From positions 62,001-126,000 of the IMG/VR virus record IMGVR_UViG_3300031957_002643: 64,000 nucleotides of DNA; one strand, 5' to 3'. Positions within the stretch are counted from its first letter, which is position 1, and each line of letters starts with the position of its first letter. Position numbers and translations under genes: made by a program. The notes beneath the pieces were generated by a model. That model was not told the origin of the DNA and did no database searches. It saw nothing but the letters and a program-made list of their open reading frames with translations. Positions 6,864 through 62,752 of this stretch are shown piece after piece.

Positions 6864-6884
6864 TTTCTTTAGATAAATAGCTGT

Positions 6885-9278
6885 ATGGCTATTTCTGATA
6901 AAGACTTACGAGAACTCGCACAAGCTATGCAAGAAGTAATCGAGAGCAATAAAAAAGCTCTCGATAGGGTTTCCGATGGTCTTTCACAAATTGCTGAAGG
7001 CATGAAAGACGAAAGTCTAAAGTCAGACAAATCTGGCAACAATGCCAAAAATGCAAAGACCGATGATGACGGACAGGGAATTCGTCTTCAATTCAGCAAA
7101 GAGAATATCGAACAATTAGGTGAATCCATCGGTCGTCACATCGCACGTAATGGTGGCATGTCTGGTGAAGGCGGTGGTGAAGGCGGTGGTGGTGAACCTG
7201 CTGGTGGAAGAAGTGCCGCTGAAGCTGCCCAGCAAGCTAAGAACGTTTCAAACATCACCGGTCTACAAGAAGATTTGATCAAACAATTAGCGAAGTTTGG
7301 TGATAATCTTCAAGAAGATATTCAACAGTATACGATCAGACAGATGCAGAGCGTTGTTCGCCAGATAACAACTGCGATGTCTGAATTCTTTTCAGGACAG
7401 GATGCTATTCGCGGGTTCACTGATAGGTTCGAACTGGCATTGGATTCTACGTCCAGAAATCTTGGAAGTTTCGTTGATGCACTGCATCATGACTTCACAT
7501 TAGTACGAATGTCATTCCGCGAAACCATGAGATCGATCACGGACGATTTGTCATCTGGTGGTCGTGCTTTCGCTATATTCGGCGGAACTATGGAAGAATA
7601 TTCCGAAGAACTTAGAAGCTTGAGACAAAATATTAATCAGGGCGATGTCGATATGTTCAGAACCATGGCGCTGGCTGAACAAAATGATTACCTTAACAAG
7701 ATGTACCAAACCATGGTCTCTCAAGGGATCACAGAGCGGTTGAATTCTGAAGAAGTTCGCAATTACGCGCGCAATCAATACATCGCATTGACAGATATTC
7801 AGAATCTTACAGGCTTGAGTCTAAAAGAGCTTCAAGAAATGAATAGTGCCAACCAAGTTGTAATTGATGAACTGGTTGCGCGTGGTAGGTTCACAGAAGA
7901 ACAGGGCGCAGAATTGACTGCCGCTACAACCGCTATCACTGCGGTGATGCCAGAGGAATTGAGAGGCTTATTCAATCAGGGTCTTCAGCAGGGCATTGCA
8001 CCGGCACAGATTGCCTTCATGGACAACAATGCTGCGACCATGGCAAATCTTGGTAATGCAATCGATGCCATGGAAGCCGCTATTTCTAATGGAATGACTG
8101 CCGATGAGGCTCGCGGCATTTTCATGAGCACCATTGATTGGGACGCATTGAACAATATTCCCTTGACCGCAATCGATGGACAAATGCAATCGATGCTTAA
8201 TAGTTTCAGAGCATCTTACGATGAACGTGAAGCCCAACGTAATGGTTTCCTTTCTGAAATGAGTAGACGGTTCGATGCATTATTTGCGGAATTCCCGGTG
8301 CTTGGCGTTATCAGAGATGTTGGTTCGGGAATCTTTGGTGTCTTCAACTCAATCGCCGCACTAAATGCAGCGATTATAGCAAATACCACCGCAGTAACCG
8401 CAAATACTGCTTCTCAACTTGGCGGATTGTTTGGCGGTCGAGGATTATTCAGGGGATTATTCCGGGCAACCGGTATCTCTGGTGCTATGTCTGGTATCAT
8501 GTCTGCTGCTAGGGGATTAGGAAAAATTCTCCCCGGTCTTCTCAGATTCGGTACTGTTGTAGCTGGTGCGATAAGCATCATCACAGATGGTATTGATTTG
8601 TTTAGAAACTTCGGAAATATGGATTGGACCGAAGTGGGCGGATCAATCCTTACCATGATTGGGAAGGGTCTTCTAATAGCCGGTGCAGTTTTGGTTGGTG
8701 GTATTCCGGGTGCAGTTATCGCGGCCATTGGTGCGGCCTTTTTTGGACTTGATGCTCTGTTGGGAGGCCGGTTGACCGATTGGGTTGAAGATGGTTTTAC
8801 GTGGTTATTGAGACAAGCTGGAAACATTGGAGTGATGCTATGGAATGGTTTCAAAGCATACATGAGTTTTGTTACAGCACCATATAGATTCCTTTTCACT
8901 AAGATCGGAGAGTTCTTTACATGGCTATGGGAAAGTTCGCCAATCAGATGGATTAGACAAAGATTAGGTCTCATGAATGACACCGCAGCCGCAGAAACCC
9001 AATCTGCTACTGATCAAATCAATCGCGAGACACGACAGATTGTTCAAAGAACTGGTGAATTGAGAACTGCCGAAGCTAGAAGATCAGAAGCAGCACTTGA
9101 TAGGGAAGCAGTCGAGGCATCACTATCGCCACGCGATGACACTAGAGAACGCGATGAAGACAGAAGAGAACGTGCCAGACAGACTCGTTTATTAGAAGAA
9201 ATTGCATCAGCAAGTCGTGGTACTAGAGAAAACACAAGACCAAGTACCGTATATAATACAGAAGCAGTAGCATATTGA
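6885..9278 (+). CDS. tape measure-like protein
   Basis: Long helical Ala/Gly-rich protein with hydrophobic segments and spaced Trp/Phe; follows the frameshifted chaperone. Confidence 0.7.
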   Translation: MAISDKDLRELAQAMQEVIESNKKALDRVSDGLSQIAEGMKDESLKSDKSGNNAKNAKTDDDGQGIRLQFSKENIEQLGESIGRHIARNGGMSGEGGGEGGGGEPAGGRSAAEAAQQAKNVSNITGLQEDLIKQLAKFGDNLQEDIQQYTIRQMQSVVRQITTAMSEFFSGQDAIRGFTDRFELALDSTSRNLGSFVDALHHDFTLVRMSFRETMRSITDDLSSGGRAFAIFGGTMEEYSEELRSLRQNINQGDVDMFRTMALAEQNDYLNKMYQTMVSQGITERLNSEEVRNYARNQYIALTDIQNLTGLSLKELQEMNSANQVVIDELVARGRFTEEQGAELTAATTAITAVMPEELRGLFNQGLQQGIAPAQIAFMDNNAATMANLGNAIDAMEAAISNGMTADEARGIFMSTIDWDALNNIPLTAIDGQMQSMLNSFRASYDEREAQRNGFLSEMSRRFDALFAEFPVLGVIRDVGSGIFGVFNSIAALNAAIIANTTAVTANTASQLGGLFGGRGLFRGLFRATGISGAMSGIMSAARGLGKILPGLLRFGTVVAGAISIITDGIDLFRNFGNMDWTEVGGSILTMIGKGLLIAGAVLVGGIPGAVIAAIGAAFFGLDALLGGRLTDWVEDGFTWLLRQAGNIGVMLWNGFKAYMSFVTAPYRFLFTKIGEFFTWLWESSPIRWIRQRLGLMNDTAAAETQSATDQINRETRQIVQRTGELRTAEARRSEAALDREAVEASLSPRDDTRERDEDRRERARQTRLLEEIASASRGTRENTRPSTVYNTEAVAY

Positions 9279-9327
9279 TTTTATGGGTTTGGCTGTAAAT
9301 ACCATACGGTCAAGGAATATTTTTTGA

Positions 9328-11505
9328 ATGCCTAAGTTTAAGTCGCAGTTACCATCACCGAATTCAGCACGAGTTACCCAAGCTAACCGTAGAGTTGGTT
9401 CTATGGTTTCAAGTCCATTGGATTGGAGCAATAGGTTAGATGCTGAAAATTACAATTTCTCCGTTCTAAACCAAATCTTTTATGGTGGTAGAAGAGATAG
9501 AATTCAGCGATATGATGTTTATGATGCAATGGATATGGACTCAGATGTCCATCGTGCATTGGATATTATTGCCGAACACTGCACCCAAAAAGACCCTAAG
9601 ACCAAAACACCATTCCAAATTCTGATCGAAGAAAATGCGATTTCTCACGAGGACACAGAAGTTCTATTCCAGATGCTTAAAATTTGGAACAGACAGTGTG
9701 ATTGGGACAACCTTGCATTCAGAACAATTAGAAACGTCATCAAATATGGTGACTTCTTCTTTGTTCGTGATAGTGAATTCAATCTTCATCCATTAAGTCC
9801 ACGAAATGTTTCTGGTGCCTACATTGATGAAGAGACATATGAAATTCAAGCATACCACCTTGTGGACTTGAAAAGGAAATATGACTTCATGCAAGAAGTC
9901 ACCGAAGCATCACCACAGGTTTCTATGTATGCGGCTGGACGAAGAGCGGCCAACCAACAACAGGACAAGGGTAAAACCTACGCGGGTATTATCGAAGCAC
10001 AGCACATCATTCACCTTTCAATGAGTGAGGGCATGGAAGTTGGTGGTAACGGACAGAACGGTGACATCTGGCCATTTGGCGATTCCATGCTTGAGCGCGT
10101 CTATAAGGACTACAAAGCAAGATCACTTCTCGAAGAAGCAGAAGTTATTCACCGTATCCAACGTGCTCCATCAAGACGTGTATTCTATATTGATGTCGGC
10201 AAGATGCGCCCCGATAAATCAGAAAGCTATGCCCGCAAGGTCAAAAACGAATTACAACAAAAAAGAATACCATCGGCATATGGCGGAACCTCATCTGTAG
10301 ATTCTGTATATAACCCCATTTCTCAAATGGAAGATTTGTTCCTAACTGTTACATCTGATGGACGTGGAACTAAAGTAGAAACATTAGAGGGCCAAGCATG
10401 GGCGGATGAGGGTCCGCTAACTTATTTCAATAATAAATTGAACAAAGGCTTAGGTGTTCCCAACTCATATATGCAGGGACCAGAAGATGGTGGATCGACG
10501 TACAATGATGGTCGAGTAGGTACCGCATATTTACAAGAAGGTCAGTTCGCCAAAATGTGTGAGCGGATTCAGGACCTTAATGATAATCTTCTCGATAATG
10601 AGTTCAAATTATATTTGGATTTCCGTGGTATTCAAATACATAGTAGTTCATTTGATTTGAAATTCATTGAACCGATTAGTTTTGATGAATATCGAGAGAT
10701 GGCTTTGAACCAAGAACGCCTTGGCGTGATGGGTTCTGCTTCACAGTTCCCATGGTTTGCTAAGCGTTTCTTGATGAAGAAGTTCGGCAATATGTCAGAG
10801 GATGATATTATTGAAAACGAACATCTCTTCATGGAAGAAAACATGTCTGCAATTGCTCGCCAGTATGACCAAGAAAATGAACTTGGTGGTATGGGCGTTG
10901 GTATTGGTGGCTTGAGTGGCAACATGTCTGGCGAATTTGGTGGCGACTTCATGGGTGGCGACGAGTTCGGTAATGAATTTGGTGGCGAAGGCGCTGAAGG
11001 TGGTGTTCCGGGTGGTCAATTCGGCGGTCCAGCCGCAGGCGGTGGTGCATTCGGTGGTGCACCGGGTGGCGGAATTGGTGGTGCGGGAGCACCGGGTGTT
11101 GAAAGCTTTATCGGTAATCCAGATAAACTACTAACTGAAGCTATGCGTTCTATTCAATACGCAGAAGGTGATCAAGAAGCATTGAAAGAAGCAATGATGA
11201 AATACATTCGTTCTGTTGGAAATAGAACAACTTTGAAAGAAGATGTTCCAGAAATTGATCCAAATGATTTGATCGCTGTTGAGAAACAACCACAGGATAA
11301 AGAGCCTGTTCCAAATGACGGAATGTTTGGTGCTGGATATAAGCAGGAAGAAGATACAAACATCCCAATTATTCCAATGTCTCACATCAGAAAGCTTCGT
11401 TTGGAAAGAGAGAAAAGCCGTAAAGACCTCATCAAACGACTGTTCATGTTCGGAACAATTTATAGTTCCGCAGGACAGGACACCGGTGGATTTGGCGGCT
11501 TCTAA
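9328..11505 (+). CDS. portal protein (T4 gp20-like) with C-terminal extension
   Basis: MDMDSDVHRALDII, LLEEAEVIHRIQRAPSRRVFYIDVG, EDLFL...DGRGTKVETLEG. Confidence 0.93.
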   Translation: MPKFKSQLPSPNSARVTQANRRVGSMVSSPLDWSNRLDAENYNFSVLNQIFYGGRRDRIQRYDVYDAMDMDSDVHRALDIIAEHCTQKDPKTKTPFQILIEENAISHEDTEVLFQMLKIWNRQCDWDNLAFRTIRNVIKYGDFFFVRDSEFNLHPLSPRNVSGAYIDEETYEIQAYHLVDLKRKYDFMQEVTEASPQVSMYAAGRRAANQQQDKGKTYAGIIEAQHIIHLSMSEGMEVGGNGQNGDIWPFGDSMLERVYKDYKARSLLEEAEVIHRIQRAPSRRVFYIDVGKMRPDKSESYARKVKNELQQKRIPSAYGGTSSVDSVYNPISQMEDLFLTVTSDGRGTKVETLEGQAWADEGPLTYFNNKLNKGLGVPNSYMQGPEDGGSTYNDGRVGTAYLQEGQFAKMCERIQDLNDNLLDNEFKLYLDFRGIQIHSSSFDLKFIEPISFDEYREMALNQERLGVMGSASQFPWFAKRFLMKKFGNMSEDDIIENEHLFMEENMSAIARQYDQENELGGMGVGIGGLSGNMSGEFGGDFMGGDEFGNEFGGEGAEGGVPGGQFGGPAAGGGAFGGAPGGGIGGAGAPGVESFIGNPDKLLTEAMRSIQYAEGDQEALKEAMMKYIRSVGNRTTLKEDVPEIDPNDLIAVEKQPQDKEPVPNDGMFGAGYKQEEDTNIPIIPMSHIRKLRLEREKSRKDLIKRLFMFGTIYSSAGQDTGGFGGF

Positions 11506-21804: not shown

Positions 21805-22479
21805 TTATAATGCGCCCATTTTAGACCTAATGCCTTCAAGCATCAGCTTTTTCTCACTGATCTTATTTTTCAAAATATCTCTACGTTTTGTGTTGCCCGG
21901 ATCAACCTGTTTATAGTGTTGCACCAGTTTGGCAGTTTCCATCATAATACTCTCTTCAGTGTTGCACCATTCGATGATTCTACTAACACGTGGATCGTTA
22001 GTATTGTTGCTTTCATTGAGTGCTGCGGCCACCATGCTCGCGGCATTAGCATGACGGAATTGATAATCGAATTTCTGTCCCGTTTTAGCATTGGTCACGC
22101 GGAACCGTTCGACTTCTTTACCAACACGGGTTTCTTTTAGAATTGTCTGAAGTTGCCAATCGCCATGAACAACCGGCTTTGTATTACCAGTCATATATGG
22201 CATGTTGCGAGCTTCATGTTCTGCAATTTGTCCAATCGGATTGCTTCCGTCCCCAAAGAACATATCTTGTGCAGCTTGTGTGCCAATATTGGTTGCTGCA
22301 TTAGTCAACATGCTTTCCATGGAATCCTGAATACCAAATGCTTCCATCATGGCTTGGCGCTGAGTGCGACCGTCGCCAGTAATATCCGCAAGCTTCTTCC
22401 GCAGATTTTTATCCGCAGATTTCATTTTTTGCTTTGATTCTAGCTGTAATGCATATGCATTAATTTTTTCATCAGACAT
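21805..22479 (-). CDS. hypothetical protein
   Basis: 224-aa ORF overlapping the upstream stop (TAATG). Confidence 0.7.
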   Translation of the reverse strand: MSDEKINAYALQLESKQKMKSADKNLRKKLADITGDGRTQRQAMMEAFGIQDSMESMLTNAATNIGTQAAQDMFFGDGSNPIGQIAEHEARNMPYMTGNTKPVVHGDWQLQTILKETRVGKEVERFRVTNAKTGQKFDYQFRHANAASMVAAALNESNNTNDPRVSRIIEWCNTEESIMMETAKLVQHYKQVDPGNTKRRDILKNKISEKKLMLEGIRSKMGAL

Positions 22480-23066
22480 TAGAATTTGCCTCCACGTGCT
22501 TTCTTCAATCGATCATTGGCTTTCTTCAACCGTTTACGACCAATGATATTGGTTAGTTTTGTCTTTTGGCGCTTCTTCGCGATAGCACCTTTGTTCTTTC
22601 TAGATGAAACTTTTCGTGCAGTGCGACGTGCATAGGATGGCGGTTCCATGCATGTAGCTACGTCTTGAGTTCTTTGACCATTCTTCGGTCCACCCAAACA
22701 TTTCATTGCAGGAACCAATTTATTGTCTTTGCGAGTAAAGACTTTTACTACGGCTTCATCAAGATTAGATATTTCTACATTGCTAAGTTCGAGAATCAAT
22801 GTTTCAGCGCCAGAACGCTTAATTCTGACCATGCCAATTTGTTTTAACCAATCACGAATAACAGCTTTCAAATTTGCTATGTCTGAAGACTTTTCTACTG
22901 CATTCGTGAAATTACTAAAAACAACGACAACACGATCCAAGGTTTCTTTATCTTTTTCAATATGAATAGATGACAATGAAACCAAGCTAGGCACACGTTT
23001 TTTGAACTCTGAAGCTTGCGTTTCAGAGAGTTCGTTCCAAGCTTTTTCGATCTTTTTATACAACAT
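22479..23066 (-). CDS. hypothetical protein with basic C-terminal domain
   Basis: K/R-rich tail after LDE; upstream TATAAATA. Confidence 0.7.
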   Translation of the reverse strand: MLYKKIEKAWNELSETQASEFKKRVPSLVSLSSIHIEKDKETLDRVVVVFSNFTNAVEKSSDIANLKAVIRDWLKQIGMVRIKRSGAETLILELSNVEISNLDEAVVKVFTRKDNKLVPAMKCLGGPKNGQRTQDVATCMEPPSYARRTARKVSSRKNKGAIAKKRQKTKLTNIIGRKRLKKANDRLKKARGGKF

Positions 23067-23100
23067 AGCTATGTATTTATAGTAAAGCCTTATTTTCTGT

Positions 23101-23638: not shown

Positions 23639-23800
23639 TTAGCTCTGATTATCCGCCTTTGTATGTGCTTTCTTTCTGCGCCGTTTAACGGAGGAACGCT
23701 CTCGTTTGATCGGTGCGTTGATAGCTGCGATATTTCCAGCACTGGTAGCACCAGAACTAGCCATCTCAGCCAAGCAGTCATGTAAAGACCGTATAATCAT
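23639..23800 (-). CDS. 53-aa basic protein with capsid N-arm-like motif (not in the ORF track)
   Basis: MIIRSLHDCLAEMASSGATSAGNIAAINAPIKRERSSVKRRRKKAHTKADNQS; preceded by TAAATA-N5-ATG. Confidence 0.7.
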   Translation of the reverse strand: MIIRSLHDCLAEMASSGATSAGNIAAINAPIKRERSSVKRRRKKAHTKADNQS

Positions 23801-23813
23801 GCTTATATTTAGT

Positions 23814-34398: not shown

Positions 34399-36954
34399 TT
34401 AACCTACGAAGTTAAAGTCCAAGCTGTCACTAACAGCATTATATACGATCTCAAATTTCTTATTATTTGAAGTATCGTCAATACTTACCTTCTCAGTCTG
34501 AACTTCATTATCAATATGTGCCGTTGTAGCAACATCAAGGGATGATCCAACATTCAAAGCACCAGAAAATTGCCAATACCCGTCATCTGCATCGAATCTC
34601 AAATCTTTCGCTGTATCAAATGCACCACCATCATATGGGATTATTGAGAAACGGTCTTCTACGGTGTCATGCACCATTTTTACAGCACCCTCACCAGAAC
34701 CCCATGTTATCTCAATTCCAGTGGTGATAACATCATTTGCATCTGATCGAAGAAATTGAGTTGAGTCCAAGGAGTCCAAGGTATCGGCATCAATACCATT
34801 GCCAGAACCTTCATCGGCAGTTGTTAGGACCCGAGACCCATTTGCTCTGACTTCGCCTGTCCCACCCGTAGTCAACAATATATGGCCATTGGTGATTTCA
34901 TTTTCGATGGTTAAATCATTGCTTGCTGCACTAACGTAACCAATACGACCTGAGCGCGTGGATAATGATGCATCTCTCGCATAAAATCCAAAATACACAT
35001 GATCACTAGAACCATCCGTTCTAAAGCGAACACCTATTGGTCCACCATCGAAATAGTTGTCTTCAGTAAAAGTATTAAGTGAAACAAGACGAGAATACCG
35101 TGTATCATTGTAATCACGATCACCAACATGAGAACCTAATGTTGGGTCAGTTGGTGATGATAGGAAACCAGACAACGTGACATTTCCAGTAACGTTTAAT
35201 GCACCACCAATATTTAACTGGTCATCAAACGCCCATGTTCCGTCATCCGCATCAAAGAAGAATTCTTTTCCGGTATCATATGCACCACCATCATATGGTC
35301 GGAAATATGTCGCATTCTGCGCGGCGACATGCTCGATGGACACGGCACCTTCGGCATTCCCACCGAAGAATAGTGTAATATCGGAAACGATTGTTGAATC
35401 ATTGTCACGTCTTACAAAGACACCACTGTTCAAACCATCCAGAAGATCGGCATCAAGTCCTGATCCTGATCCATCAACCGTTAAGAGTTTGGCCAACACA
35501 TCAGCAGCCGTGTAGGACGCTGCTGGAAGGTAATACGATCCCTCTTGGCCATCTAGGGTATCAGCATCCAATCCGTTACCAGAGCCTTCGTCAGCAACAG
35601 TGAGAACACGATTACCACTAATGACAAGCTGCTCTCCCGAAATATCAAATGAGAATACGGTAGTGTACCCTGAATTTCTAAATGCGATACCAGAATCATT
35701 TAATGACGTGATGGTTAACGCATTAGTATGATCAATCCACAATGCACCACCCGAAGAACGATACAATTTGGTACCATCATCAGCGCCCAGATTGTTTTTG
35801 AAAATAATTTCAACCGCATTGTCTATATTAAAATCACCAGTAAGAGTATCACCAGAAGCATTCAAATATCGAGCATCATTATATCCCCTATCACCAATAT
35901 GATCATCTGATGTTGGATCACCCACATTGCCGATAAGCGAACCGCTTGGCGTCCAATAATCATTGGTTTCGTCCCAAAGCCAAGTTACATTGGTTTCGGT
36001 TCCGCGCTCAACTTCTAAGCCTGAGTTTTCTGTCGGCGTTCCAGTAACGTCATTGTTGAGAAGAATGATGTTGTCACCGGTAGAAATAGTCGTGGTATCA
36101 ACAAAGGTGGTCGATCCATTAAACGTCCAATCACCAGTGATTGTTGCATTCTCGTCTTTTCGTGGAAATGCGCTTGCATGATATGTATCGAGAGTATCAG
36201 CATCAAGACCCGATCCTGATCCATCATTGGCAGATGTCCAAACGGTTGCGGCAGAGCCACCTTCAAACAATTCCAATGAATAATCATTCGCGCCATTTCT
36301 CGTGAACCTCATTATAAGGTCTGAAGAATCAGAAGAATATTTTAAAGTATGTTGGTTAGAACCATCTAGACCAGAAAGTCTAGTAGCAGTATTTGATAAG
36401 GTAACTTGTCCAGAAAATTGCCAGTTTCCCGTAATTCCAGCATTTTCCGATTTGCGAGCAAATGCAGATGATGTGTAACCATCCAGAGTATCAGCATCAA
36501 GTCCATTGCCTGATCCAGTATCAGCAGTTGTTAGAATACGACTGCCACCAAGATAACCTTCACCAGCATTGTCCATTCTGAAACCAACATCTTTGGTTCC
36601 ACCAATGGTAATGTTTAGAGAACCATCCGACCCATCAATCCAAAATCGCTTGTCGGTAAACGTTGAACCATCGTAAAAGGCTAGACCACTCGTGTTTCCA
36701 TAATTGGTTAGATGTAAATCGCCATAAACCGTTCCAGAATAATCTGAACCGATGATCAAATCATCCCTTGCCTGAATTCGTTTCGTGACATCAAGAATGT
36801 TATTCGTTTCGGAAATGTTGACGAGAAGTCCGTCAGTCGTTCCGACAAATTGAATGTCACCATTGGATGCGACTTGAAGTTCTGTGGTCGAAGATACGGA
36901 ACCAGAGAATTCAATTTTAGCCTGACCCGGAATTATTAGAATATCGTTAGCCAT
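34399..36954 (-). CDS. tail fibre protein with G(S/N)G(L/I)DADxLD repeats
   Basis: Five such motifs; SGLEVERG module. Confidence 0.8.
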   Translation of the reverse strand: MANDILIIPGQAKIEFSGSVSSTTELQVASNGDIQFVGTTDGLLVNISETNNILDVTKRIQARDDLIIGSDYSGTVYGDLHLTNYGNTSGLAFYDGSTFTDKRFWIDGSDGSLNITIGGTKDVGFRMDNAGEGYLGGSRILTTADTGSGNGLDADTLDGYTSSAFARKSENAGITGNWQFSGQVTLSNTATRLSGLDGSNQHTLKYSSDSSDLIMRFTRNGANDYSLELFEGGSAATVWTSANDGSGSGLDADTLDTYHASAFPRKDENATITGDWTFNGSTTFVDTTTISTGDNIILLNNDVTGTPTENSGLEVERGTETNVTWLWDETNDYWTPSGSLIGNVGDPTSDDHIGDRGYNDARYLNASGDTLTGDFNIDNAVEIIFKNNLGADDGTKLYRSSGGALWIDHTNALTITSLNDSGIAFRNSGYTTVFSFDISGEQLVISGNRVLTVADEGSGNGLDADTLDGQEGSYYLPAASYTAADVLAKLLTVDGSGSGLDADLLDGLNSGVFVRRDNDSTIVSDITLFFGGNAEGAVSIEHVAAQNATYFRPYDGGAYDTGKEFFFDADDGTWAFDDQLNIGGALNVTGNVTLSGFLSSPTDPTLGSHVGDRDYNDTRYSRLVSLNTFTEDNYFDGGPIGVRFRTDGSSDHVYFGFYARDASLSTRSGRIGYVSAASNDLTIENEITNGHILLTTGGTGEVRANGSRVLTTADEGSGNGIDADTLDSLDSTQFLRSDANDVITTGIEITWGSGEGAVKMVHDTVEDRFSIIPYDGGAFDTAKDLRFDADDGYWQFSGALNVGSSLDVATTAHIDNEVQTEKVSIDDTSNNKKFEIVYNAVSDSLDFNFVG

Positions 36955-36994
36955 TCGTTACCTCTATGGTTTATTTATCAAATGGCCTTCGCAC

Positions 36995-42900: not shown

Positions 42901-45663
42901 TAGATCATAAGTGTCTGTATCTAAATAGAAATCACCATCCACACCATCAGCAACATCATCTGGTGCGCCAGAACCATTGAGCACGGTTCTACCATCCACA
43001 CCATCATTACCTGCTGGACCAGCAATGCCCTGTGGTCCAATTGGACCGGTTGGACCGGTTGGACCCTCAGCACCGGTTGGACCGGTTGGGCCAGTTGGAC
43101 CCTGAATACCTTGTTCGCCCTGAGCGCCCTGAACTCCTGCTGGACCGGTTGGGCCAGTTGGACCTTGAGCGCCCTGCGGACCAGTTGGACCCTGAATACC
43201 TTGTTCACCCTGAATACCTTGGATGCCTTGAATGCCCTGCGGACCGGTTGGACCGGTTGGTCCTTGGATGCCTTGTTCGCCTTGTGGACCGGTTGGACCG
43301 GTTGGGCCGGTTGGACCCGGAAGTCCTGAAGATGAGACGTTTAGAATTTGAATGGCATCATCAGCATCTTTAAAGTAGATATTGCCATCTTTATAGTTCA
43401 AGAACAGCTCACCATAGGCCAGATCACCAGCCGCAGGCTGAACACCCTGCAAGCCGCTGCTCTTGACGGTAATAAGCATGTCATCACCATCAGCAATCAA
43501 CCCATCAAGTGATAGACTTGCCTGATTGGTAGTTGCCAGATCACCAAGTTCCAATGCAGTTCTAGCATCTGCCGCAGTAGCGGTTCCTGCTAGAGTTCGA
43601 CCAAAAGCTTTCAAGTCATACAAGGCGGCAGTATTAAGTGCAGTGGTGTATATTGCTTTATCGGCGGCAGTTGTAAGCCCGGAAATACTTTGCAGCAATG
43701 CGCTGTATGCTTGAACATCTGAACCAATAGCAACACCAAGATTAGTTCTTGCTGAATTTTTATTAGACAAATCGTCAAGGTTTAATGATGCTGTCAGTTT
43801 TCCTGCAAGAGAATTGGTAATGGTCGTTGCAAAGTTTGGATCATCACCCAACGCAGCAGCAAGTTCATTTAGTGTATCTAATGCAGATGGTGCACCACCT
43901 AACAGATTGGAAATTGCCGTGGAAACAAATGCGGTTGTTGCAAGTTGATCTGTATTAGTACCAGCTAAAGCTGTTGGTGCTTCAGGCTCGCCTGTGAAAA
44001 CGGGAGTATCCAGTCTGGCAATAGAAGATGGAATATCACCATCTACCAATGTTGTACCAGATGATACACGTCCATATGAGTCAACCGCAACTTTGGTATA
44101 TGTTCCCGGTGTACCAATTGTTGGAAGATCGCCTGATTGAAGTGCTGCACCCGCAGTAACAATACCACGGTCGTTAACAGTTACCTTGCCATAGGTGCCA
44201 GCAGAAACGCCAGATGCAGGAAGATCAGAATTTGAAAGCGTTGTCGCGCTCGTTACGATACCTTTGACGTTGACAGTTAACTTTGTGTATGTGCCAGCGG
44301 TGACACCGGAATCTGGAAGTCCTTCATTATCCAACGCCTGACCATCGGTAACACGTCCATATTGGTCAACGGTCAATGAATTATAGGTGCCCGGTGTAAC
44401 AATACTTGGAAGCAGTGTTGCATCGAATGATTGTGCAGCCGTAATGATACCTTTGTCGTTAACAGTGACCGCACCATATGTTCCCGGCGTGACTCCTGAA
44501 ACTGGCAAGTCTGAATTGACAAGCTGTCCCGCACTCACAGCACGACCAGTTGTATCCAATTCGATTTTTGTGTAGGTTCCAGCAGAAAGACCAACAATAG
44601 TTGGGAAATCCGCAGTTTCAAGAGAACTAGTTCCGGTAACAATACCTTTTGAATTGACGACCAGTTTTGCATACGTTCCCGGCGTGACTCCTGAATCTGG
44701 AAGATCAGAATTGATTAAAGTGGTTCCAGCAGTTGCCCTACCATATGTGTCAACAGTGAGCTTGGTATATGTTCCGGCAGAAATTGCTGTTGGCGGCAAG
44801 TCACTGTCTTGAATATTAGCAACGGCAGTAATGATACCTTTATTGTTTACGGTGACTTTAGAATATGTACCCGGTGTAATAGCTTGTGCGGCAATCGCAA
44901 TGTCATAACTTGAACCAGCACCATTATCCAACAGATCGAAGTCAGCAGAAAAATTAATGCTTCTTTCGTTATTGAGCGTTGCGGTATTTCCAATCGTGAG
45001 AACAGGAATATCAATGAACGGATCAGTGATATTTTTGACCCATTCAGTCGTTGGAACAACCCTACTATCTTCACCAGCCGCAGGCGTGTCCGTTAAAATG
45101 AGTGTTGAATCAATACTATCGTCAAAGGTTTTGTTGCCTCTGATAAACTGATCTCCAACAAGTGCGACAAATCCTTCAGTTAAGGCTTCAGCCGGGTCCT
45201 TGTTCACCCAATTGGATGAAAGCGCGTCATAAACAAGAAGTTGCTTATCCCCAAGGGAAGTCAGATTGGTATCCGCAGCATCAGCGATAGATGCGGCTGG
45301 ACCCGCAGGACCGGCTGGACCCTGAATACCTTGTTCACCCTGATCACCCTGATCACCTGTTGGACCCAACAGGCTTGAAATGAAAACCCATTCACCATTC
45401 ACTCGGTAAAAAATTTCACCGGTTGACTTCTTTAGGTAATAATCGTCCTCATTGCCGACATTTGGATCAGGATCGGTATCACCATTGTACCATTTGGATG
45501 CAAGGTATGGATTTTGGGCACGAAGATAAATTGGAGGAAGATCAGGAAATGAAATCTTGGTACCAGCATTTTCGCCATCTCTGATATACTCGATGGTCAT
45601 ATCCTCGATGGAAAATGATGTGGAAGTTGTTCCTAATGTATTCGTTAAACGTGATTTAGTCAT
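39901..45663 (-). CDS. giant tail fibre (1920 aa) with collagen-like and [13 protein letters not shown] repeats
   Basis: Nine GTY-type repeats of about 33 aa, [27 protein letters not shown] tracts, C-terminal KSFVIDHP...GSLEGPE domain. Confidence 0.88.
42720..43320 (-). repeat. collagen-coding tandem repeats (GPTGPT/GIQG)
   Basis: Repeated ggaccggtt 9-mers inside the fibre gene. Confidence 0.9.
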
Positions 45664-45711
45664 GTGCCAAACATTTTGCTGTTCAGATATTTATTGAACT
45701 AAGAGCAAATG

Positions 45712-46230
45712 TCAGTCGATTGAAATGACTATTCCATTTTGAATTGATATGGACTTACCGTCAGCAGTTTGAAAGCTACCGTTAATTCCCGAACCAATGT
45801 CCAATCCGGGCGCTCCTTGTGGTCCCTGTGGACCAATTGGACCAGTTGCACCTACGGGTCCTTGAATGCCTTGAAGTCCACGTGGTCCTTCTGGTCCATC
45901 CAAACCAATTCCAACTGGACCAACTGGTCCAGTTGGACCCATTGGTCCACCCATGAAACCTTCATTGTTCCAGTCCCCGATATTATCTTTCTGATAGAAT
46001 TGGCTTGTTTGTTTATCAAGATACAAATCGCCAGAATTGCCCTTGGAGTAATCTGGTGGACCGGAACCAATATGCCATTGTGTCGCCACCATTGGCTGGT
46101 CAAACCGAATTTTCACATCTTGTTTGTTTGGATATTTGAAAACAATTTGCTCACCATCTGTCGTGATGGTGAGTTTTCCTATTTTGAATGTTGGGCTTGT
46201 CGTGCCGGAAATACTAGAATTTGCGCTCAT
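45712..46230 (-). CDS. short collagen-like fibre protein
   Basis: G-X-Y tract; N-terminus paralogous to the downstream fibre. Confidence 0.8.
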
Positions 46231-46238
46231 GCAAATAT

Positions 46239-46541
46239 TTAGAGATATCCATGTACCGAAAGGTTAGATTTGCCGTCGAATGCGGAATCAATTATATTAG
46301 CAGTCGTACTCAAATCTGTGCGCTTAACTTCGATCACCGCATATGCAGCATTCTCTTTAGTTCTGCCGTTATATTCATAGTTTTCCAATATTCCAAGTTC
46401 ATCCAATTCACGTCTAACAGCAGTCAGTTTCTTGCGGTCTTCATTGCTTTCACTGGTGACGTAAATTCTACGTGTGTTGTCTTCCAGATACAATGAAAGT
46501 GAATCGATCTGGATATCATCAAACATTTCTTTACTGCTCAT
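46239..46541 (-). CDS. hypothetical protein
   Basis: Likely start MSSKEM, overlapping the upstream gene end. Confidence 0.6.
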
Positions 46542-46800
46542 CTTTCTTTCCCTTAGTTTTCTCTTCCAGTTTGTCCACACCTAAATCGAATTTTCTAAAA
46601 TTGTTGCTCTTAATCGAATTGAAAAATCTCTTCTTAAGATCGTCAGCCGTTTCCTTATCACAATTTTGCTCAATATCGATCATCAACTTTTTGACAGCAG
46701 TGAACACACGTTCTCCGTGAGTTCGCAAGCGAACCGGATAAGATTTAGGTGGAACATAGTTTTCCAGTTCTTGTAATAAGGAATGTTTTTTCTCGGCCAT
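46531..46800 (-). CDS. small hypothetical late protein
   Basis: SLLQELE...LKKRFFNSIKS..F.KF; preceded by TAAATA-N5-ATG. Confidence 0.7.
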   Translation of the reverse strand: MAEKKHSLLQELENYVPPKSYPVRLRTHGERVFTAVKKLMIDIEQNCDKETADDLKKRFFNSIKSNNFRKFDLGVDKLEEKTKGKKDEQ

Positions 46801-46861
46801 GGAGATATTTATTTGTCCTAGTGTGGATTTTATTGTTTTGGATCATATTTCCACCGAATGA

Positions 46862-49719: not shown

Positions 49720-49751
49720 GAAGAAATGAGTACTCTAGTATAAATAGATTC

Positions 49752-50270
49752 ATGGATAGCCAACTCACCAAGCCAGCGCTTCACAATGTATTATATGACA
49801 TTCCAAGGTTTGTCGTAGGTGCACCCGGATCGCAACACAGATCGTCTAATGGCGATATGAAGCTTCATGCTGGAATTGCACAGCCACTAGATTTTCGTTT
49901 TATGACTAAGGACGGTGTTCCTTTGAATCTAACGAATTTTGATCTCTATTTGATCTTCTGGACTAATAATCGTTTCGATATGGATTATGGTCCTAATGGT
50001 TATACCCTTGATAACATTGATGATATTTCATTGCGCAAATCTCTGGATTTGATTGAAGCCTATGAGGGATCAGCTTCGACTCTTTTGACAAATGAAGATA
50101 CCGAGAAGCTTGCACGTGATGCCCGCAACAATTCTATGCGTTGGGGGTTGTTCATGGTTAACAGTGACAAGCAGGTATTTGCCATGTCTGTTACTCAAAC
50201 TGGTGATGTTTCTGGCAGCGTGATCATTAATACTGGTGATGTTCCTCCATACGAAATGATTATTGGATAA
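49752..50270 (+). CDS. late hypothetical protein, possibly structural
   Basis: TATAAATA-N5-ATG; beta-rich. Confidence 0.7.
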   Translation: MDSQLTKPALHNVLYDIPRFVVGAPGSQHRSSNGDMKLHAGIAQPLDFRFMTKDGVPLNLTNFDLYLIFWTNNRFDMDYGPNGYTLDNIDDISLRKSLDLIEAYEGSASTLLTNEDTEKLARDARNNSMRWGLFMVNSDKQVFAMSVTQTGDVSGSVIINTGDVPPYEMIIG

Positions 50271-55314: not shown

Positions 55315-55315
55315 A

Positions 55316-56689: not shown

Positions 56690-56727
56690 ATTACGGGAGA
56701 GACCAATAAGCCTCTCCCGTAATTTTT
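56690..56727. terminator. hairpin between the gp32-like and uvsX genes
   Basis: ATTACGGGAGAG...CTCTCCCGTAAT. Confidence 0.55.
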
Positions 56728-56729
56728 GA

Positions 56730-57841: not shown

Positions 57842-59602
57842 TCAGGTAAGAATTGGCATTGGTGCTTCTTCGTAATCATCTTCGTCGTAATACTCTTCTT
57901 CGGTGACATTCATGATGCTGAACTGAATAGCATCATCAATATCTTCTTCATAGTATTTGAGTTCTTCTAATAGATGGCACATCAATACACAGGCCATAAC
58001 TCGGTCATCTTTTTGGCCCGGCTTGGCCTCATATCCCTTACCTCGCTTGACGAAATTTTTGAGTTCAGTGATCAACCCACGTGATCTTGGAATGAAAACA
58101 TTGCGCTCAATATATGCTTTCAGCCTAATAGCATAATCTCGTTTGGACGGATTAGTTGTTCGTATACCTCTAGACTTGTTGCCATCACTATCAACAAGAT
58201 AACCCGGAATGTTTTCTTCGCCCTCATAAATCAAGATGTTCAAAACACCTTGCCCGACGCCATTACATTCAACAGAATAATAGATAAGACTTTCACCAAT
58301 ATGATCTGGTAGAGCCTGTTGTTCATCATCGATAAACTTTAGAATCCTGACAAGCTGTTTTGCTTGTTCAACCATATCAACTTCATTAGCAGCCCATTCG
58401 GCAACTTGAATCATGTCTGGTAATGAAAATACCTGAATACATGCATTATCGCCGCCCACACCTTCAGCCGGATCAAGGATCACGCCATAAATCGTATTAG
58501 ATTGAATTCTCTCGTACCAGATAGTTTTGTGTCTATCGACATAAACTGGTTTCTTTGCATATGCATTTAACGAGAGAAGCTTTCCTGCATCGATCAGAGT
58601 TTCGTCACCAGAGACAAAACGGCATTCAAATTCTCGGTACCATTCGTCCATGGTAGTACCTTCAGCCAATGTTTTCCTTTTGAAATCATCATTACGATCT
58701 GGATGTTCCTTCCAATGCACAAAGAATCGACGGAAACCAGCTTCTACCCCACCATCGTCTTTGTGTTCGGACTCTGCATATCCAAGACGACTCATTTCTA
58801 ATTGGTAATCATTCTTGGCTTGTTCATTTTCGAATAAGGTTTCGTAATTTCCCTTTTTGGAAGCTAATGCTCTTGGATCGATCCCCATTTCATCCAGAAG
58901 ATCATCTTTCCATGCAAATGAGTTTGCGGCATCTTCAGCTTTGAACCAGATAGATGCAAATTTGTCTTCGTCTGTGTTCGGCGTTGATGTGATAATCATT
59001 TGTCCACCGACAGCAGCAAGTGCTGGTGAAACTGAAGTCCACATTTCTTTTTGAATGTTTGGTTCGACGTATGCAAACTCATCGAGATATAGAATATGAA
59101 TGGATTTACCACGACCAGTACTCTTGGTCGTGTTTTCAGCAATAATACGAGTGCCGTTATCAAATTTGATTTCGTGAACGTTATTGACTGCCAAGCCCGG
59201 TTTCATGAACCATGGACATTCAAAATACATCTCTTTAATTTTTTCCATGATCTCTTTTGCCATGTCGCCCTTGTTGGCAGCAATGACAATATTGATCTTT
59301 GGTTGGAAACAAGCCTTCCAAAACAAATATGCCGTGGACGAGGTGGTCTTGCCGGTCTGTCTGGGGAGCATACAAATAACTCTTTTAGAAGAATTATAAT
59401 TATCAAGGAGTCTTTTCTGGAAGTCGAAAGTTTTAAACTTGCCCGGCCCCTTGATCCCTACAATATTGACATAATTTTCAATAAAGTAGTGCATGTCTTT
59501 ACTGCACCGGACTAACTCCATCAACTGATGTGGTGTATAATCTTGTTTATAACCGGCTGGCTTAATTTTGCCGCCATCTTCTTCTGGAATAAATCTTCCC
59601 AT
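57842..59602 (-). CDS. terminase large subunit (T4 gp17-like)
   Basis: PRQTGKT, LYLDEFA, ITSTPN, LDPAEGVGGD, KDDRVM. Confidence 0.95.
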   Translation of the reverse strand: MGRFIPEEDGGKIKPAGYKQDYTPHQLMELVRCSKDMHYFIENYVNIVGIKGPGKFKTFDFQKRLLDNYNSSKRVICMLPRQTGKTTSSTAYLFWKACFQPKINIVIAANKGDMAKEIMEKIKEMYFECPWFMKPGLAVNNVHEIKFDNGTRIIAENTTKSTGRGKSIHILYLDEFAYVEPNIQKEMWTSVSPALAAVGGQMIITSTPNTDEDKFASIWFKAEDAANSFAWKDDLLDEMGIDPRALASKKGNYETLFENEQAKNDYQLEMSRLGYAESEHKDDGGVEAGFRRFFVHWKEHPDRNDDFKRKTLAEGTTMDEWYREFECRFVSGDETLIDAGKLLSLNAYAKKPVYVDRHKTIWYERIQSNTIYGVILDPAEGVGGDNACIQVFSLPDMIQVAEWAANEVDMVEQAKQLVRILKFIDDEQQALPDHIGESLIYYSVECNGVGQGVLNILIYEGEENIPGYLVDSDGNKSRGIRTTNPSKRDYAIRLKAYIERNVFIPRSRGLITELKNFVKRGKGYEAKPGQKDDRVMACVLMCHLLEELKYYEEDIDDAIQFSIMNVTEEEYYDEDDYEEAPMPILT

Positions 59603-59651
59603 TATATTCTACTCACGTATATTACATGAGTATTTACAGTGCTATAGTTAA

Positions 59652-60599: not shown

Positions 60600-60628
60600 A
60601 ATATATACGCTCTTTACTTCCGTGTCAA
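60600..60628 (-). promoter_or_regulatory. sigma70-type early promoter
   Basis: TTGACA-17nt-TATATT. Confidence 0.75.
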
Positions 60629-60883: not shown

Positions 60884-60885
60884 GG

Positions 60886-61341: not shown

Positions 61342-61348
61342 CGATCTC

Positions 61349-61804
61349 CTACGATTGAACCATTCCGAGAACTTGGCATTCCAACCATGCAACATAGTTG
61401 GTTTCGCCAGACTGCTTGAAGCGTTCAACCAGTTCAGCAGTACTCGAATCGACCGGCTTGAGAATGTCCATGACGTTCGTGTAGTTCGGATAGATGGTAT
61501 CCTGCGCCTTGTAGAACCCGGCCTCACGGGCTGTCAAAACAGGCCGACCTTCATTGTCGTAATAGCCGGTGGTTTCGAAACCTTTGTTGAATTCATCGAA
61601 CGGTTCAAAATCCAGTTCGAGTTCATAGTATTCATCTTCGGTGTCACGAAGATCGACCTTCTTAATGCGAACCAGACGAGCACGCATACCAGCTTCGGCA
61701 TAGCATTCCAAATCTTCGGTTTTGAATTCATCATGGAATTCAATATTCTTGCCGACCAGCGCTTGAAGATAATTGCGAATTTCAGAGTTGTCGATCTTGC
61801 TCAT
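61349..61804 (-). CDS. early hypothetical protein
   Basis: 151 aa; GGGAGAG RBS. Confidence 0.7.
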   Translation of the reverse strand: MSKIDNSEIRNYLQALVGKNIEFHDEFKTEDLECYAEAGMRARLVRIKKVDLRDTEDEYYELELDFEPFDEFNKGFETTGYYDNEGRPVLTAREAGFYKAQDTIYPNYTNVMDILKPVDSSTAELVERFKQSGETNYVAWLECQVLGMVQS

Positions 61805-61831
61805 AATGTTCTCTCCCGTTGAACAATAGTG

Positions 61832-61860
61832 TTTATATACGGAAGAAATACATTTGTCAA
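61832..61860 (-). promoter_or_regulatory. sigma70-type early promoter
   Basis: TTGACA-17nt-TATAAA. Confidence 0.75.
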
Positions 61861-62741
61861 CTCATAACAACGACATTATTTCTCATTGATTTCAAAATGG
61901 TCAAAATTGCTTTCTCGCCAACTTTTGCAATTCTGTCCAACCTTGCTTGACCTTTTCTTTTGTTACCGATCAAAGGGTGGCCGTGGAATTCGTCTGGCAT
62001 TTGAAATCTGATTTTTCCAGTTACCAAAAATTGAGTAATGGATTCTGTCATCAACTCATCCACAACAGCCAGATTATTGTTTCTCGCACTTCCAAATGTG
62101 AAGAAGGCATTATAGAAATTGGCAATTTCAGGAGGTTGTCTAAAAACGCCATCATCGGCAGCAAAGCCGGTTGGGGCGCTCCATAGATTATATCCATACA
62201 TCTCGGAAATAATTTTTTCCATCTCTCCAAATACTTTTTTGGTGAAGACGTGCCACACATAATCAAATTCCAACCCTTTTCGCGGGTAGTTAATGATTTC
62301 ATGTGCAAACCGATGCATGAAACTCCAAGGTGTCATTTTGCCCTTGATCATAACGATGACGCCCTCATCATTTAAAACCTCAACATCCAAACCACTAAGA
62401 ATAAGAACAATAGACCCTTTTCGCTTATTGGTAGCTATGAGTTTCTTTAAAGATTCGGGATGTTCGTCTCGGGTATATTTTGTCAAATCCCGATTGATGA
62501 CAAAATAATCAATATCAACTGGTAGTCGGTCTAGGACCTTTTTAACACGTTCCAATAGATCGGAATTCAAAATGATGTCTTTTTGCTCATCATTCCAATC
62601 CGATCCAGTTTTGTGTATAATCTTTTTGTGGCCCAGCAGTCCGAAGAAACGTGGTTTCTTGTAGACGAGTTCAAACGTGTCCGAATCCCAATCGTCACCT
62701 TTGATCACCTGTCCAGCTTCTATCAAATCTTGAATTTTCAT
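61857..62741 (-). CDS. putative packaged internal protein with HRxxH motif
   Basis: Leader MKIQDLIE; MTPWSFMHRFAHE; preceded by TAAATA-N5-ATG. Confidence 0.65.
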   Translation of the reverse strand: MKIQDLIEAGQVIKGDDWDSDTFELVYKKPRFFGLLGHKKIIHKTGSDWNDEQKDIILNSDLLERVKKVLDRLPVDIDYFVINRDLTKYTRDEHPESLKKLIATNKRKGSIVLILSGLDVEVLNDEGVIVMIKGKMTPWSFMHRFAHEIINYPRKGLEFDYVWHVFTKKVFGEMEKIISEMYGYNLWSAPTGFAADDGVFRQPPEIANFYNAFFTFGSARNNNLAVVDELMTESITQFLVTGKIRFQMPDEFHGHPLIGNKRKGQARLDRIAKVGEKAILTILKSMRNNVVVMS

Positions 62742-62752
62742 GAAGATATTTA

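What the first reader, a model, noticed from the sequence alone, without database searches (positions are those of the whole stretch)
6874..62752. Recurrent TAAATA-N5-ATG: late genes are probably leaderless
Seen: exactly 5 nt separate TAAATA from the ATG, with no SD in between, at starts 6885(+), 23800(-), 46230(-), 46800(-), 49752(+) and 62741(-); the spacing is 7 nt at 23066. Other TAAATA sites (near 5527, 9297, 21775, 23635, 36975, 45690, 57808, 59633) have longer leaders. Known: the T4 late promoter TATAAATA is a -10-only element with +1 about 6 nt downstream. Inference: +1 falls on the A of ATG, so the phage uses leaderless translation systematically for a subset of late genes.
Basis: partly seen in the sequence, partly recalled or inferred. 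Interest (0 to 1): 0.65.

Follow-up and report, generated by a model that had tools for sequence, protein, structure and literature searches.

The report
Late promoters fused to start codons
In this uncultivated marine jumbo phage about a third of the T4-type late promoters (TAAATA) sit exactly 5 bases before the ATG, so those late messages should start at the start codon itself with no ribosome-binding leader; several uncultivated relatives share the layout, but none of the eight cultured phages I tested does.

Summary
In the whole 335.5-kb phage genome, the TAAATA-to-ATG distance shows one sharp peak at 5 nt: 25 sites, 22 opening ORFs of at least 50 codons, against about 1.5 per other distance.

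TAAATA behaves as a T4-type late promoter:
- The phage encodes a gp55-family late sigma factor.
- The hexamer is avoided inside genes and concentrated between them.
- It has no -35 partner.
- It precedes portal, terminase, tail-fibre and virion genes, and also tRNA genes.

With T4 geometry (element at -13 to -6), +1 falls on the A of ATG. Any transcript from these promoters can carry at most 5 nt of leader. The N5 genes lack a Shine-Dalgarno sequence (SD), while 40% of the phage's genes have a strong one.

Uncultivated relatives (G001, G002 and others) show the same layout at 4-7 nt. PA5oct, T4 and six other cultured phages do not. Orthologues switch between the leaderless and the SD-led form.

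No RNA data exist, so the start site and leaderless translation remain inferred. I rate it a new variant of known kinds (T4 late promoters; leaderless late mRNAs of Thermus phage phiYS40).

The parts
6874..6887 (+). TAAATA-N5-ATG in front of gene 6885-9278 (797 aa). This gene is the positional orthologue of the PA5oct virion protein gp335, just upstream of the portal gene.
   Evidence: The close relative L003 keeps TAAATA-N5-ATG with a different N5. In PA5oct the gene in the same position has TAAATA about 42 nt upstream, an SD and a GTG start.
46798..46811 (-). TAAATA-N5-ATG in front of gene 46531-46800 (89 aa), a virion structural protein.
   Evidence: phrog_11854 aligns from residue 1 of the protein to position 1 of the profile, which fixes the start. 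No terminator-like site lies between this gene and the co-directional replication genes upstream.
46228..46241 (-). TAAATA-N5-ATG in front of gene 45712-46230 (172 aa), a collagen-repeat tail-fibre-like protein.
49741..49754 (+). TATAAATA-N5-ATG in front of gene 49752-50270 (172 aa). It lies in a 32-nt gap between divergent genes; the primase ATG is at 49719 on the minus strand.
   Evidence: The gap leaves no room for another promoter plus a leader.
62739..62752 (-). TAAATA-N5-ATG in front of gene 61857-62741 (294 aa, N-terminus MKIQDLIE). Its upstream neighbour is divergent.
23798..23811 (-). TAAATA-N5-ATG in front of a 53-codon ORF (23639-23800). The promoter starts 2 nt after the stop codon of the upstream gene.
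   Evidence: The ORF is short and has no homologue evidence.
1868..1881 (-).
23064..23081 (-). TATAAATA-N7-ATG in front of gene 22479-23066 (195 aa). It has a near-leaderless spacing.
9296..9330 (+). An SD-led TAAATA late promoter of the portal gene (d=26, SD aagga), for contrast.
   Evidence: d=25 in L003.
59600..59636 (-). A leadered TAAATA promoter of the large terminase gene 57842-59602 (d=28). The orthologues in G001, G002 and L008 have d=5.
45661..45693 (-). A leadered TAAATA promoter (d=24) of the 1920-aa gene 39901-45663.
36952..36977 (-). A leadered TAAATA promoter (d=17, SD gaggt) of the tail-fibre gene 34399-36954.
2707..2729 (-). TAAATA 16 nt upstream of tRNA-Arg(TCT) 2631-2707. 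Here the promoter serves a non-coding gene.

Best explanation
The window comes from a complete 335.5-kb uncultivated marine jumbo phage of the T4 supercluster. Its nearest cultured relative is Pseudomonas phage PA5oct, at 40% portal identity.

Late in infection, host RNA polymerase carrying the phage's gp55-type sigma factor (genome 6289-6858, outside the window) would recognise a -10-only element, (A)TAAATA, and start about 6 nt downstream on a purine. At roughly a third of these promoters the element sits exactly 5 nt before an ATG: 22-25 of about 70 in the genome, 7 in the window. The transcript would therefore begin with AUG. It has no 5' leader and no SD, and would have to be translated as a leaderless mRNA. 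The other late promoters carry 11-27-nt leaders with an SD, and a few drive tRNAs.

Shown: the motif, its exact spacing, its promoter-like distribution, the sigma gene, the absence of SD, and conservation of the layout in relatives. Inferred: the position of +1, leaderless translation, and the likely benefit.

The likely benefit is that a gene built this way is translated only from transcripts begun at its own late promoter. Read-through from upstream early or middle genes would then yield no virion protein.
For: Spacing. The genome-wide histogram peaks only at d=5 (22 ORF-opening sites; 1 each at d=4 and d=6). TAAATA at -11 is the most position-specific hexamer upstream of first ATGs, and one-mismatch variants are almost absent.

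Promoter identity. The gp55 homologue scores phrog_234 7e-25 and phrog_12791 1e-26 and matches T4 gp55 at 4e-7. Only 40 of 140 TAAATA copies lie inside genes, and 100 lie in the 16% of the genome that is intergenic. 61 have a co-oriented CDS start and 8 a tRNA start within 80 nt. There is no information upstream of -12. The genes served are portal, terminase, tail fibre, virion proteins and a head-tail adaptor.

Position of +1. T4's element spans -13 to -6. Leadered promoters have a purine at the predicted +1 in 32 of 41 cases (P=2e-4). Four tRNAs here and one in G001 have TAAATA-N5-AT immediately before the mature 5' end, and apart from a second, overlapping TAAATA copy at tRNA-Leu 261049 (d=2) no tRNA lies closer than that.

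No alternative way to initiate. The SD energy is about 0 at N5 starts, while 40% of all genes reach -6 kcal/mol or better against 4% of internal ATGs. The gene at 49752 lies in a 32-nt divergent gap. ATG is used at 68 of 72 short-spacing starts across four genomes. The first 40 nt of N5 ORFs fold less stably than those of SD-led genes (-2.5 against -4.5 kcal/mol, P=0.004).

Conservation. L003 keeps the N5 spacing with different N5 letters. G001 has 13, 18, 6 and 5 sites at d=4, 5, 6 and 7, and G002 has 5 and 13 at d=4 and 5. The pattern beats the reversed control 20:5 and 16:0.
Against: No transcript data exist: only two DNA runs from seawater hold this sequence.

About half of the N5 genes follow a co-directional gene by only 4-13 nt, and in four the TAA of the motif is that gene's stop codon. 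Termination-reinitiation on longer transcripts could therefore also translate them.

TAAATA occupies the place where an SD normally sits.

Nine of the 22 share an M[KR]I..L[FY]E N-terminus and could have spread as one promoter-plus-5'-end module.

In G001 the spacing varies from 4 to 7 nt, which needs a flexible start site or 1-2-nt leaders.

No gp33 or gp45 homologue was detectable by simple searches. No factor that might favour leaderless translation was found either: no S21 and no IF3.

The host is unknown.
Confidence: 0.7

Rival explanations
1. TAAATA is the late promoter, but the adjacent ATGs are translated mainly from longer polycistronic late transcripts. Translation would then go by termination-reinitiation or by SD-independent entry on an A/U-rich site. 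On this reading the N5 spacing reflects gene packing or an RBS-like role of the A/T-rich hexamer, not a 5'-terminal AUG.
For: About half of the N5 genes lie 4-13 nt after a co-directional gene, and in four the motif's TAA is that gene's stop codon. The hexamer sits at the usual SD position. The gene after 49752-50270 starts 3 nt after its stop without a clear SD, so coupling does occur in this phage.
Against: Three to four N5 genes have a divergent upstream neighbour, one in a 32-nt gap. The same exact hexamer stands 16-32 nt upstream of genes that have their own SD, and upstream of tRNAs. One-mismatch variants are absent at -11, which fits sigma recognition better than loose A/U-rich ribosome binding. 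Runs of consecutive genes each carry their own TAAATA: 46800, 46230 and 45663 here, and four in a row beside the terminase in G001.
Confidence: 0.15
2. The enrichment is mostly a by-product of paralogy or cassette spread. A promoter-plus-N-terminal-peptide module (TAAATA-N5-ATG-MKIxxLFE) would have been copied many times, with the remaining sites arising by chance.
For: Nine of 22 N5 proteins share the octapeptide and nothing else detectable. Relatives have similar N-termini, such as MRINDLL, MKISDLD and MKIKELFE.
Against: Thirteen other N5 ORFs have unrelated products, against about 1.5 expected. The sequences flanking the hexamer and the N5 letters differ among the nine. In G001 and G002 the class includes the terminase and many unrelated genes. 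Orthologues keep the spacing while N5 diverges.
Confidence: 0.05
3. The start codons are mis-assigned. On this reading the real starts lie downstream behind an SD, so the transcripts have leaders that happen to begin with AUG.
For: A few N5 ORFs have in-frame alternatives. Examples are genome 209674 (ATG at +35 codons, SD -6.2) and 111752 (TTG at +57 codons, SD -9.5).
Against: Most have no in-frame alternative with an SD within 40 codons. The frame is open from the N5 ATG, and usually nothing lies upstream. phrog_11854 aligns from residue 1. The orthologue in L003 conserves MAISD from the first codon. The conserved N-terminal octapeptide begins at this ATG in nine proteins.
Confidence: 0.05

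Closest known systems
T4-type late promoters (gp55 sigma, gp33 co-activator, gp45 clamp; TATAAATA at -13 to -6)
   Same: The phage has a gp55-family sigma. The core is the same TAAATA, with A preferred at -12 and a poorly conserved -13, as reported for other T4-like phages, and with CTAAATA in Aeh1 (PMC1524935). There is no -35 element. The element stands in front of virion genes.
   Different: T4 shows only a weak excess of TAAATA-N5-ATG over the reversed control (10 against 5), and its late genes have SD leaders; ipII and ipIII, for example, have aaaggaaacat before the ATG. Here a third of the promoters abut the start codon. No gp33 or gp45 homologues were detected by simple searches.
Thermus phage phiYS40 (Sevostyanova et al. 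2007, as summarised in PMC3594737)
   Same: A large myovirus that makes most of its middle and late mRNAs without a leader.
   Different: Its host belongs to Deinococcus-Thermus, where a -10 element next to the ORF is a common cellular layout (PMC12340547). It is not a gp55/TAAATA system. It is reported to shift host IF2 and IF3 levels. Here no IF3 or S21 gene was found, and most non-late genes use a strong SD.
The '-10 region adjacent to ORF' expression pattern of Deinococcus-Thermus (PMC12340547)
   Same: The geometry is the same: a -10-type element a few bp before the ORF, a spacing requirement, and about one third of genes affected.
   Different: That case is a cellular housekeeping sigma with a TANNNT motif. 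This one is a phage-encoded late sigma with an exact hexamer, and it is restricted to the late class.
Pseudomonas phage PA5oct (Arenbergviridae), the nearest cultured relative
   Same: It has 40% portal identity, a gp55 homologue, and TAAATA upstream of orthologous virion genes.
   Different: It has no peak at 4-7 nt, and its orthologues are SD-led. Its omics paper reports only sigma70-like promoters and does not mention late or leaderless ones (PMC7318152).

Membership tests
T4-type (gp55-dependent) late promoter | The phage encodes a gp55-family late sigma factor. | tested here: met
   Genome 6289-6858(+): T4 gp55 match at E=4e-7; phrog_234 7e-25 and phrog_12791 1e-26. Homologues are also present in G001 and PA5oct.
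T4-type (gp55-dependent) late promoter | A conserved TATAAATA-like -10 element. | tested here: met
   The exact TAAATA core has A at -12 in 59% of sites, and -13 is not conserved. It is avoided inside genes and enriched between them. One-mismatch variants are absent at the fixed offset. The full octamer is not enriched.
T4-type (gp55-dependent) late promoter | No -35 element. | tested here: met
   Information content is at most 0.18 bit at every position from -50 to -2 relative to the hexamer, over 66 sites.
T4-type (gp55-dependent) late promoter | It serves late (virion) genes. | tested here: met
   Portal, large terminase, tail fibre, virion structural proteins and a head-tail adaptor. It also serves tRNAs, a GNAT and a PhoH-like gene.
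T4-type (gp55-dependent) late promoter | Transcription starts 6 nt after the element. | not testable with these tools
   No RNA run holds the phage. Indirect support: a purine at the predicted +1 in 32 of 41 leadered promoters, and the TAAATA-N5-AT|tRNA rule.
T4-type (gp55-dependent) late promoter | A gp33 co-activator and a gp45 sliding clamp. | tested here: inconclusive
   T4 gp45 and gp33 find nothing in the genome. Both proteins diverge fast, and no profile search was run.
Leaderless mRNA | A 5' UTR that is absent or only a few nt long. | not testable with these tools
   Geometry only: a transcript from a promoter whose -10 element ends 5 nt before the ATG cannot carry more than 5 nt of leader.
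Leaderless mRNA | No SD before the start codon. | tested here: met
   SD duplex energies at N5 starts range from +1.6 to -4.2 kcal/mol, while 40% of all genes reach -6 or better.
Leaderless mRNA | AUG as the start codon (the 5'-terminal AUG requirement). | tested here: met
   22 ATG and 1 GTG here. 68 of 72 are ATG at d=4-5 across four genomes, against 84% ATG among SD-led genes. The contrast is weak.
Leaderless mRNA | Translation from the 5' end has been demonstrated. | not testable with these tools
   This needs toeprinting, ribosome profiling or reporters.

The most novel reading that the evidence does not exclude
Several lineages of uncultivated jumbo phages related to PA5oct have turned the gp55-type late promoter into a combined transcription and translation start signal. 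Fusing the -10 element to the AUG makes a gene translatable only when it is transcribed from its own late promoter. Read-through from the co-directional replication genes would stay silent, which gives a leak-proof temporal gate. The same module also launches tRNAs with a 2-nt leader. The layout has been gained or lost repeatedly at orthologous genes, such as the terminase and the head-tail adaptor. It may depend on a still unknown change in the infected cell's initiation machinery.
Probability: 0.3. Interest if true: 0.7.

Novelty: new variant of a known kind. Interest (0 to 1): 0.58.

Why it matters
It would be the first case I could find of T4-type late promoters used systematically to make leaderless mRNAs; four literature searches found none. 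The phage's other genes rely on a strong SD, so its host evidently translates SD-led messages.

It gives a simple, testable rule for calling late genes and their true start codons in metagenomic jumbo-phage genomes, where gene callers that expect an SD may misplace these starts.

It suggests how a phage can tie translation strictly to one promoter class.

Orthologues switch between the two architectures, which offers natural pairs for measuring the cost and benefit of leaderless expression.

Tried and rejected
Direct RNA evidence:
- The look-up of sequencing runs returned only two seawater DNA runs held as contigs and no RNA. I did not use read laying, because contigs cannot show 5' ends.

Close relatives of the 797-aa protein:
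- Peptide patterns found none. One helicase-based locus search failed on the server.

Phage-encoded helpers for leaderless translation, or for removing SD-led mRNAs:
- Ribosomal protein S21 (PF01165), IF3 (PF00707) and RegB (PF10715) gave no hit. The RegB search rang in no control genome either, so it is uninformative.

T4 gp45 and gp33:
- No hit.

Cultured phages with the same layout:
- PA5oct, RsoM2USA, Xoo-sp13, GAP32, Phosso, Atu_ph07 and CBB sit near the reversed-pattern control. T4 shows a weak 10-to-5 excess. PA5oct's full histogram has no peak.

Other points:
- Megablast of 8 kb against phage records found no match.
- Rfam found only the two tRNAs in the window.
- TAAATA depletion is not visible against a 4th-order Markov expectation (140 against 145), because its sub-words are depleted too. 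It is clear against the mononucleotide expectation (385) and against hexamers of the same composition.
- I looked at stop-codon recoding because ARAGORN calls CUA and UCA tRNAs. Stop-codon usage looks ordinary.
- I did not identify the host.
- I did not use the large protein searches or structure prediction, because the claim does not rest on them.
Full report
**What the window is**

The window is bases 62001-126000 of a single 335,552-bp viral record with direct terminal repeats, rated complete, at 42% GC. The only public runs that hold it are seawater metagenomes.

Its portal (phrog_213), large terminase, gp32-like SSB, DnaB-like helicase and primase place it in the T4 supercluster of jumbo phages. 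The best cultured match is Pseudomonas phage PA5oct at 40% portal identity, followed by RsoM2USA, Xoo-sp13 and the RaK2/GAP32 group. There is no nucleotide-level match among phage records.

**The observation**

That makes 7 against 1.1 expected, and no shuffle out of 100 reached 7. The 7-nt case at 23066 and the longer leaders at the other TAAATA sites are also as described.

There are 140 TAAATA copies on the two strands. The distance to a downstream ATG has one sharp peak at 5 nt. That peak holds 25 sites, of which 22 open an ORF of at least 50 codons. Distances 4 and 6 have one such site each, and the other distances average 1.5 (Poisson P about 2e-18).

A second, broad group lies at 16-32 nt, with a local maximum at 24. 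These leaders carry clear SD sequences such as ggag and aggag.

I also scored every hexamer at every offset upstream of the first ATG of 410 called genes, without assuming a motif. TAAATA at -11 is the top signal, in 15 genes. It beats any SD hexamer at any single offset, and one-mismatch variants are nearly absent there.

**TAAATA is a promoter, not a translation signal**

- The genome encodes a gp55-family late sigma factor at 6289-6858 (T4 gp55 match E=4e-7; phrog_234 7e-25 and phrog_12791 1e-26).
- Among the 15 hexamers of composition A4T2, TAAATA is the rarest inside genes (40 copies; the others range from 100 to 381). It also has 100 copies in the 16% of the genome that is intergenic.
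- Of those intergenic copies, 61 have a co-oriented CDS start and 8 a co-oriented tRNA start within 80 nt.
- Over 66 such sites, no position from -50 to -2 relative to the hexamer carries more than 0.18 bit. The base just before the hexamer is A in 59% of sites. This is the -10-only anatomy of T4 late promoters, including the weak -13 position noted for other T4-like phages (PMC1524935).
- The genes served are portal, terminase, tail fibres, virion structural proteins and a head-tail adaptor.
- For contrast, a separate set of genes carries a sigma70-like TTGACA/TATAA cassette with a strong SD.

**Where transcription would start**

T4's TATAAATA lies at -13 to -6. TAAATA-N5 therefore puts +1 on the A of ATG. 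There are no transcript data, but three indirect observations agree.

- In the 41 leadered promoters, the sixth base after the hexamer is a purine in 32 cases (P=2e-4) and C in only 2. The four bases after the hexamer tend to be pyrimidines.
- Four tRNA genes here (Pro 232854c, Ser 250713, Thr 257712, Ser 263097) and one in the distant relative G001 have TAAATA-N5-AT directly before the mature 5' end. No tRNA lies closer than that, except that a second, overlapping TAAATA copy lies 2 nt before tRNA-Leu 261049 (the upstream copy is at 9 nt). The other distances are 12, 16 and 18 nt.
- Whatever the exact +1, a transcript begun at a promoter whose -10 element ends 5 nt before the ATG cannot carry more than 5 nt of leader.

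**No other obvious way to initiate translation**

With a simple gene caller (415 genes), 40% of genes have an anti-SD duplex of -6 kcal/mol or better, against 4% of internal ATGs. The N5 starts range from +1.6 to -4.2.

Most N5 ATGs have no in-frame start upstream and no SD-backed alternative downstream. Homology supports these starts. phrog_11854 aligns from residue 1 of the 89-aa protein, and the L003 orthologue of the 797-aa protein begins with the same MAISD.

The gene at 49752 sits in a 32-nt gap opposite the divergent primase gene. The first 40 nt of N5 ORFs fold less stably than those of SD-led genes (-2.5 against -4.5 kcal/mol, P=0.004). ATG is used at 68 of 72 short-spacing starts in four genomes.

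**Comparative evidence**

A close relative (L003, portal 83% identical) keeps TAAATA-N5-ATG at the 797-aa gene, with N5 changed from gctgt to aacgt.

Loci found through the terminase (35-47% identity) show the layout even more densely. I fetched three of the records behind these loci in full (G001, G002 and G005):

- G001 (353 kb, 98% complete) has 13, 18, 6 and 5 ORF-opening sites at d=4, 5, 6 and 7.
- G002 (147 kb) has 5 and 13 sites at d=4 and 5.
- The pattern beats its reversed control 20:5 in G001 and 16:0 in G002.

In those genomes the terminase itself and its three neighbours each have their own TAAATA-N5-ATG.

Seven of the eight cultured phages stay near the control: PA5oct, RsoM2USA, Xoo-sp13, GAP32, Phosso, Atu_ph07 and CBB. 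T4 shows a weak excess, 10 against 5. PA5oct's histogram is flat.

Orthologues switch state:

- The terminase is d=28 here, d=5 in G001, G002 and L008, and SD-led in PA5oct.
- The head-tail adaptor-like gene is d=27 here, d=5 in G001 and G002, and d=32 in PA5oct.
- The 797-aa virion protein is N5 here, while the PA5oct gene in the same position, gp335, has TAAATA about 42 nt upstream with an SD and a GTG start.

The G001 terminase is closer to PA5oct's (53%) than to this phage's (35%). The trait is therefore patchy across the group.

**Caveats**

About half of the N5 genes follow a co-directional gene by only 4-13 nt, and in four the motif's TAA is that gene's stop codon. Reinitiation on longer transcripts cannot be excluded for those.

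Nine of the 22 N5 proteins share only an N-terminal M[KR]I..L[FY]E and may have spread as a module. Thirteen unrelated ORFs remain, against about 1.5 expected.

The 4-7-nt spread in G001 implies a flexible start site or 1-2-nt leaders.

No gp33 or gp45 homologues were found by simple searches, and no S21, IF3 or RegB. The host is unknown.

**A likely function (inference)**

In the window the replication genes (primase, helicase) lie directly upstream of the N5 virion genes at 46800 and 46230, on the same strand. No terminator-like site lies between them.

A gene whose only start signal is a 5'-terminal AUG is silent on read-through RNA. It becomes translatable only from its own late promoter.

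From my own knowledge, T4 solves the same problem for lysozyme and some other late genes with RBS-hiding hairpins in early transcripts. I did not check this here.

**Comparison with what is known**

The parts are known. One is gp55-type late promoters. Another is leaderless middle and late mRNAs in Thermus phage phiYS40. The third is a -10 element next to the ORF in Deinococcus-Thermus.

I found no paper linking T4-type late promoters or jumbo phages of this group to leaderless mRNAs. The PA5oct omics paper reports only sigma70-like promoters.

I therefore rate it a new variant of a known kind. It is well supported at the sequence level and untested at the RNA level.

Noticed in passing
window 61857-62741(-); genome 143787(+), 144280(+), 156697(-), 244226(-), 257989(+), 259365(+), 262666(+), 280540(+): Nine otherwise unrelated small proteins (104-294 aa; no BLASTP similarity to each other, and no PHROG family for the three members I scanned) all begin with M[KR]I..L[FY]E, written with varied synonymous codons, and all sit behind TAAATA-N5-ATG. 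The motif resembles the N-terminus MKTYQEFIAE shared by T4 internal head proteins IPII and IPIII. G001 and G002 have MKTFKEYLAE next to the terminase. They may be packaged internal head proteins with a capsid-targeting, protease-cleaved (L-x-E) propeptide. That is a hypothesis drawn from my memory of T4 biology.
   Followed up: partly
window about 61802-61864(-); genome 53502, 126723, 148226, 149849 (all -) and others: A repeated early-type cassette: TTGACA, a 17-nt spacer, TATAA, a conserved leader whose TCTCCCGT can pair with ACGGGAGAG (the SD), and then an ATG 6 nt on. About eight genes carry it. It looks like a sigma70 promoter with an SD-sequestering hairpin.
   Followed up: partly
window 56693-56728: A perfect hairpin, ACGGGAGAG-loop-CTCTCCCGT, lies just downstream of the SSB gene. 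It uses the same 9-mer as the early cassette and may be a bidirectional terminator.
   Followed up: no
genome 145422-145493(-) and 254867-254942(+), outside the window: ARAGORN calls tRNAs with anticodons UCA and CUA (suppressor-like) among 44 tRNAs. Stop-codon usage (TAA 208, TGA 157, TAG 50) and read-through counts give no sign of recoding.
   Followed up: partly
genome 126887-127266(-), about 900 nt past the window end: A phage-encoded tmRNA with the predicted tag ANDNDFAVEARIAA. It could help to guess the host.
   Followed up: no
window 2328-2404(-) and 2631-2707(-): Two copies of tRNA-Arg(TCT) lie about 300 nt apart. Only the upstream one has a TAAATA, 16 nt before it.
   Followed up: no
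window 25517-31273(-) and 39901-45663(-); genome 189569(+) and 305382(+): There are very large ORFs: 1918 and 1920 aa in the window, and 2957 and 4535 aa elsewhere. Those starting at 45663, 189569 and 305382 have leadered TAAATA promoters. The two in the window were not scanned for families.
   Followed up: no
window 62997-63037: Two full TATAAATA octamers face away from each other in the 305-nt divergent gap between 62741(-) and 63047(+). The minus-strand octamer is followed by no ORF of 45 or more codons within 80 nt and lies 250 nt upstream of the N5 promoter. It may drive a small RNA or a small ORF.
   Followed up: no
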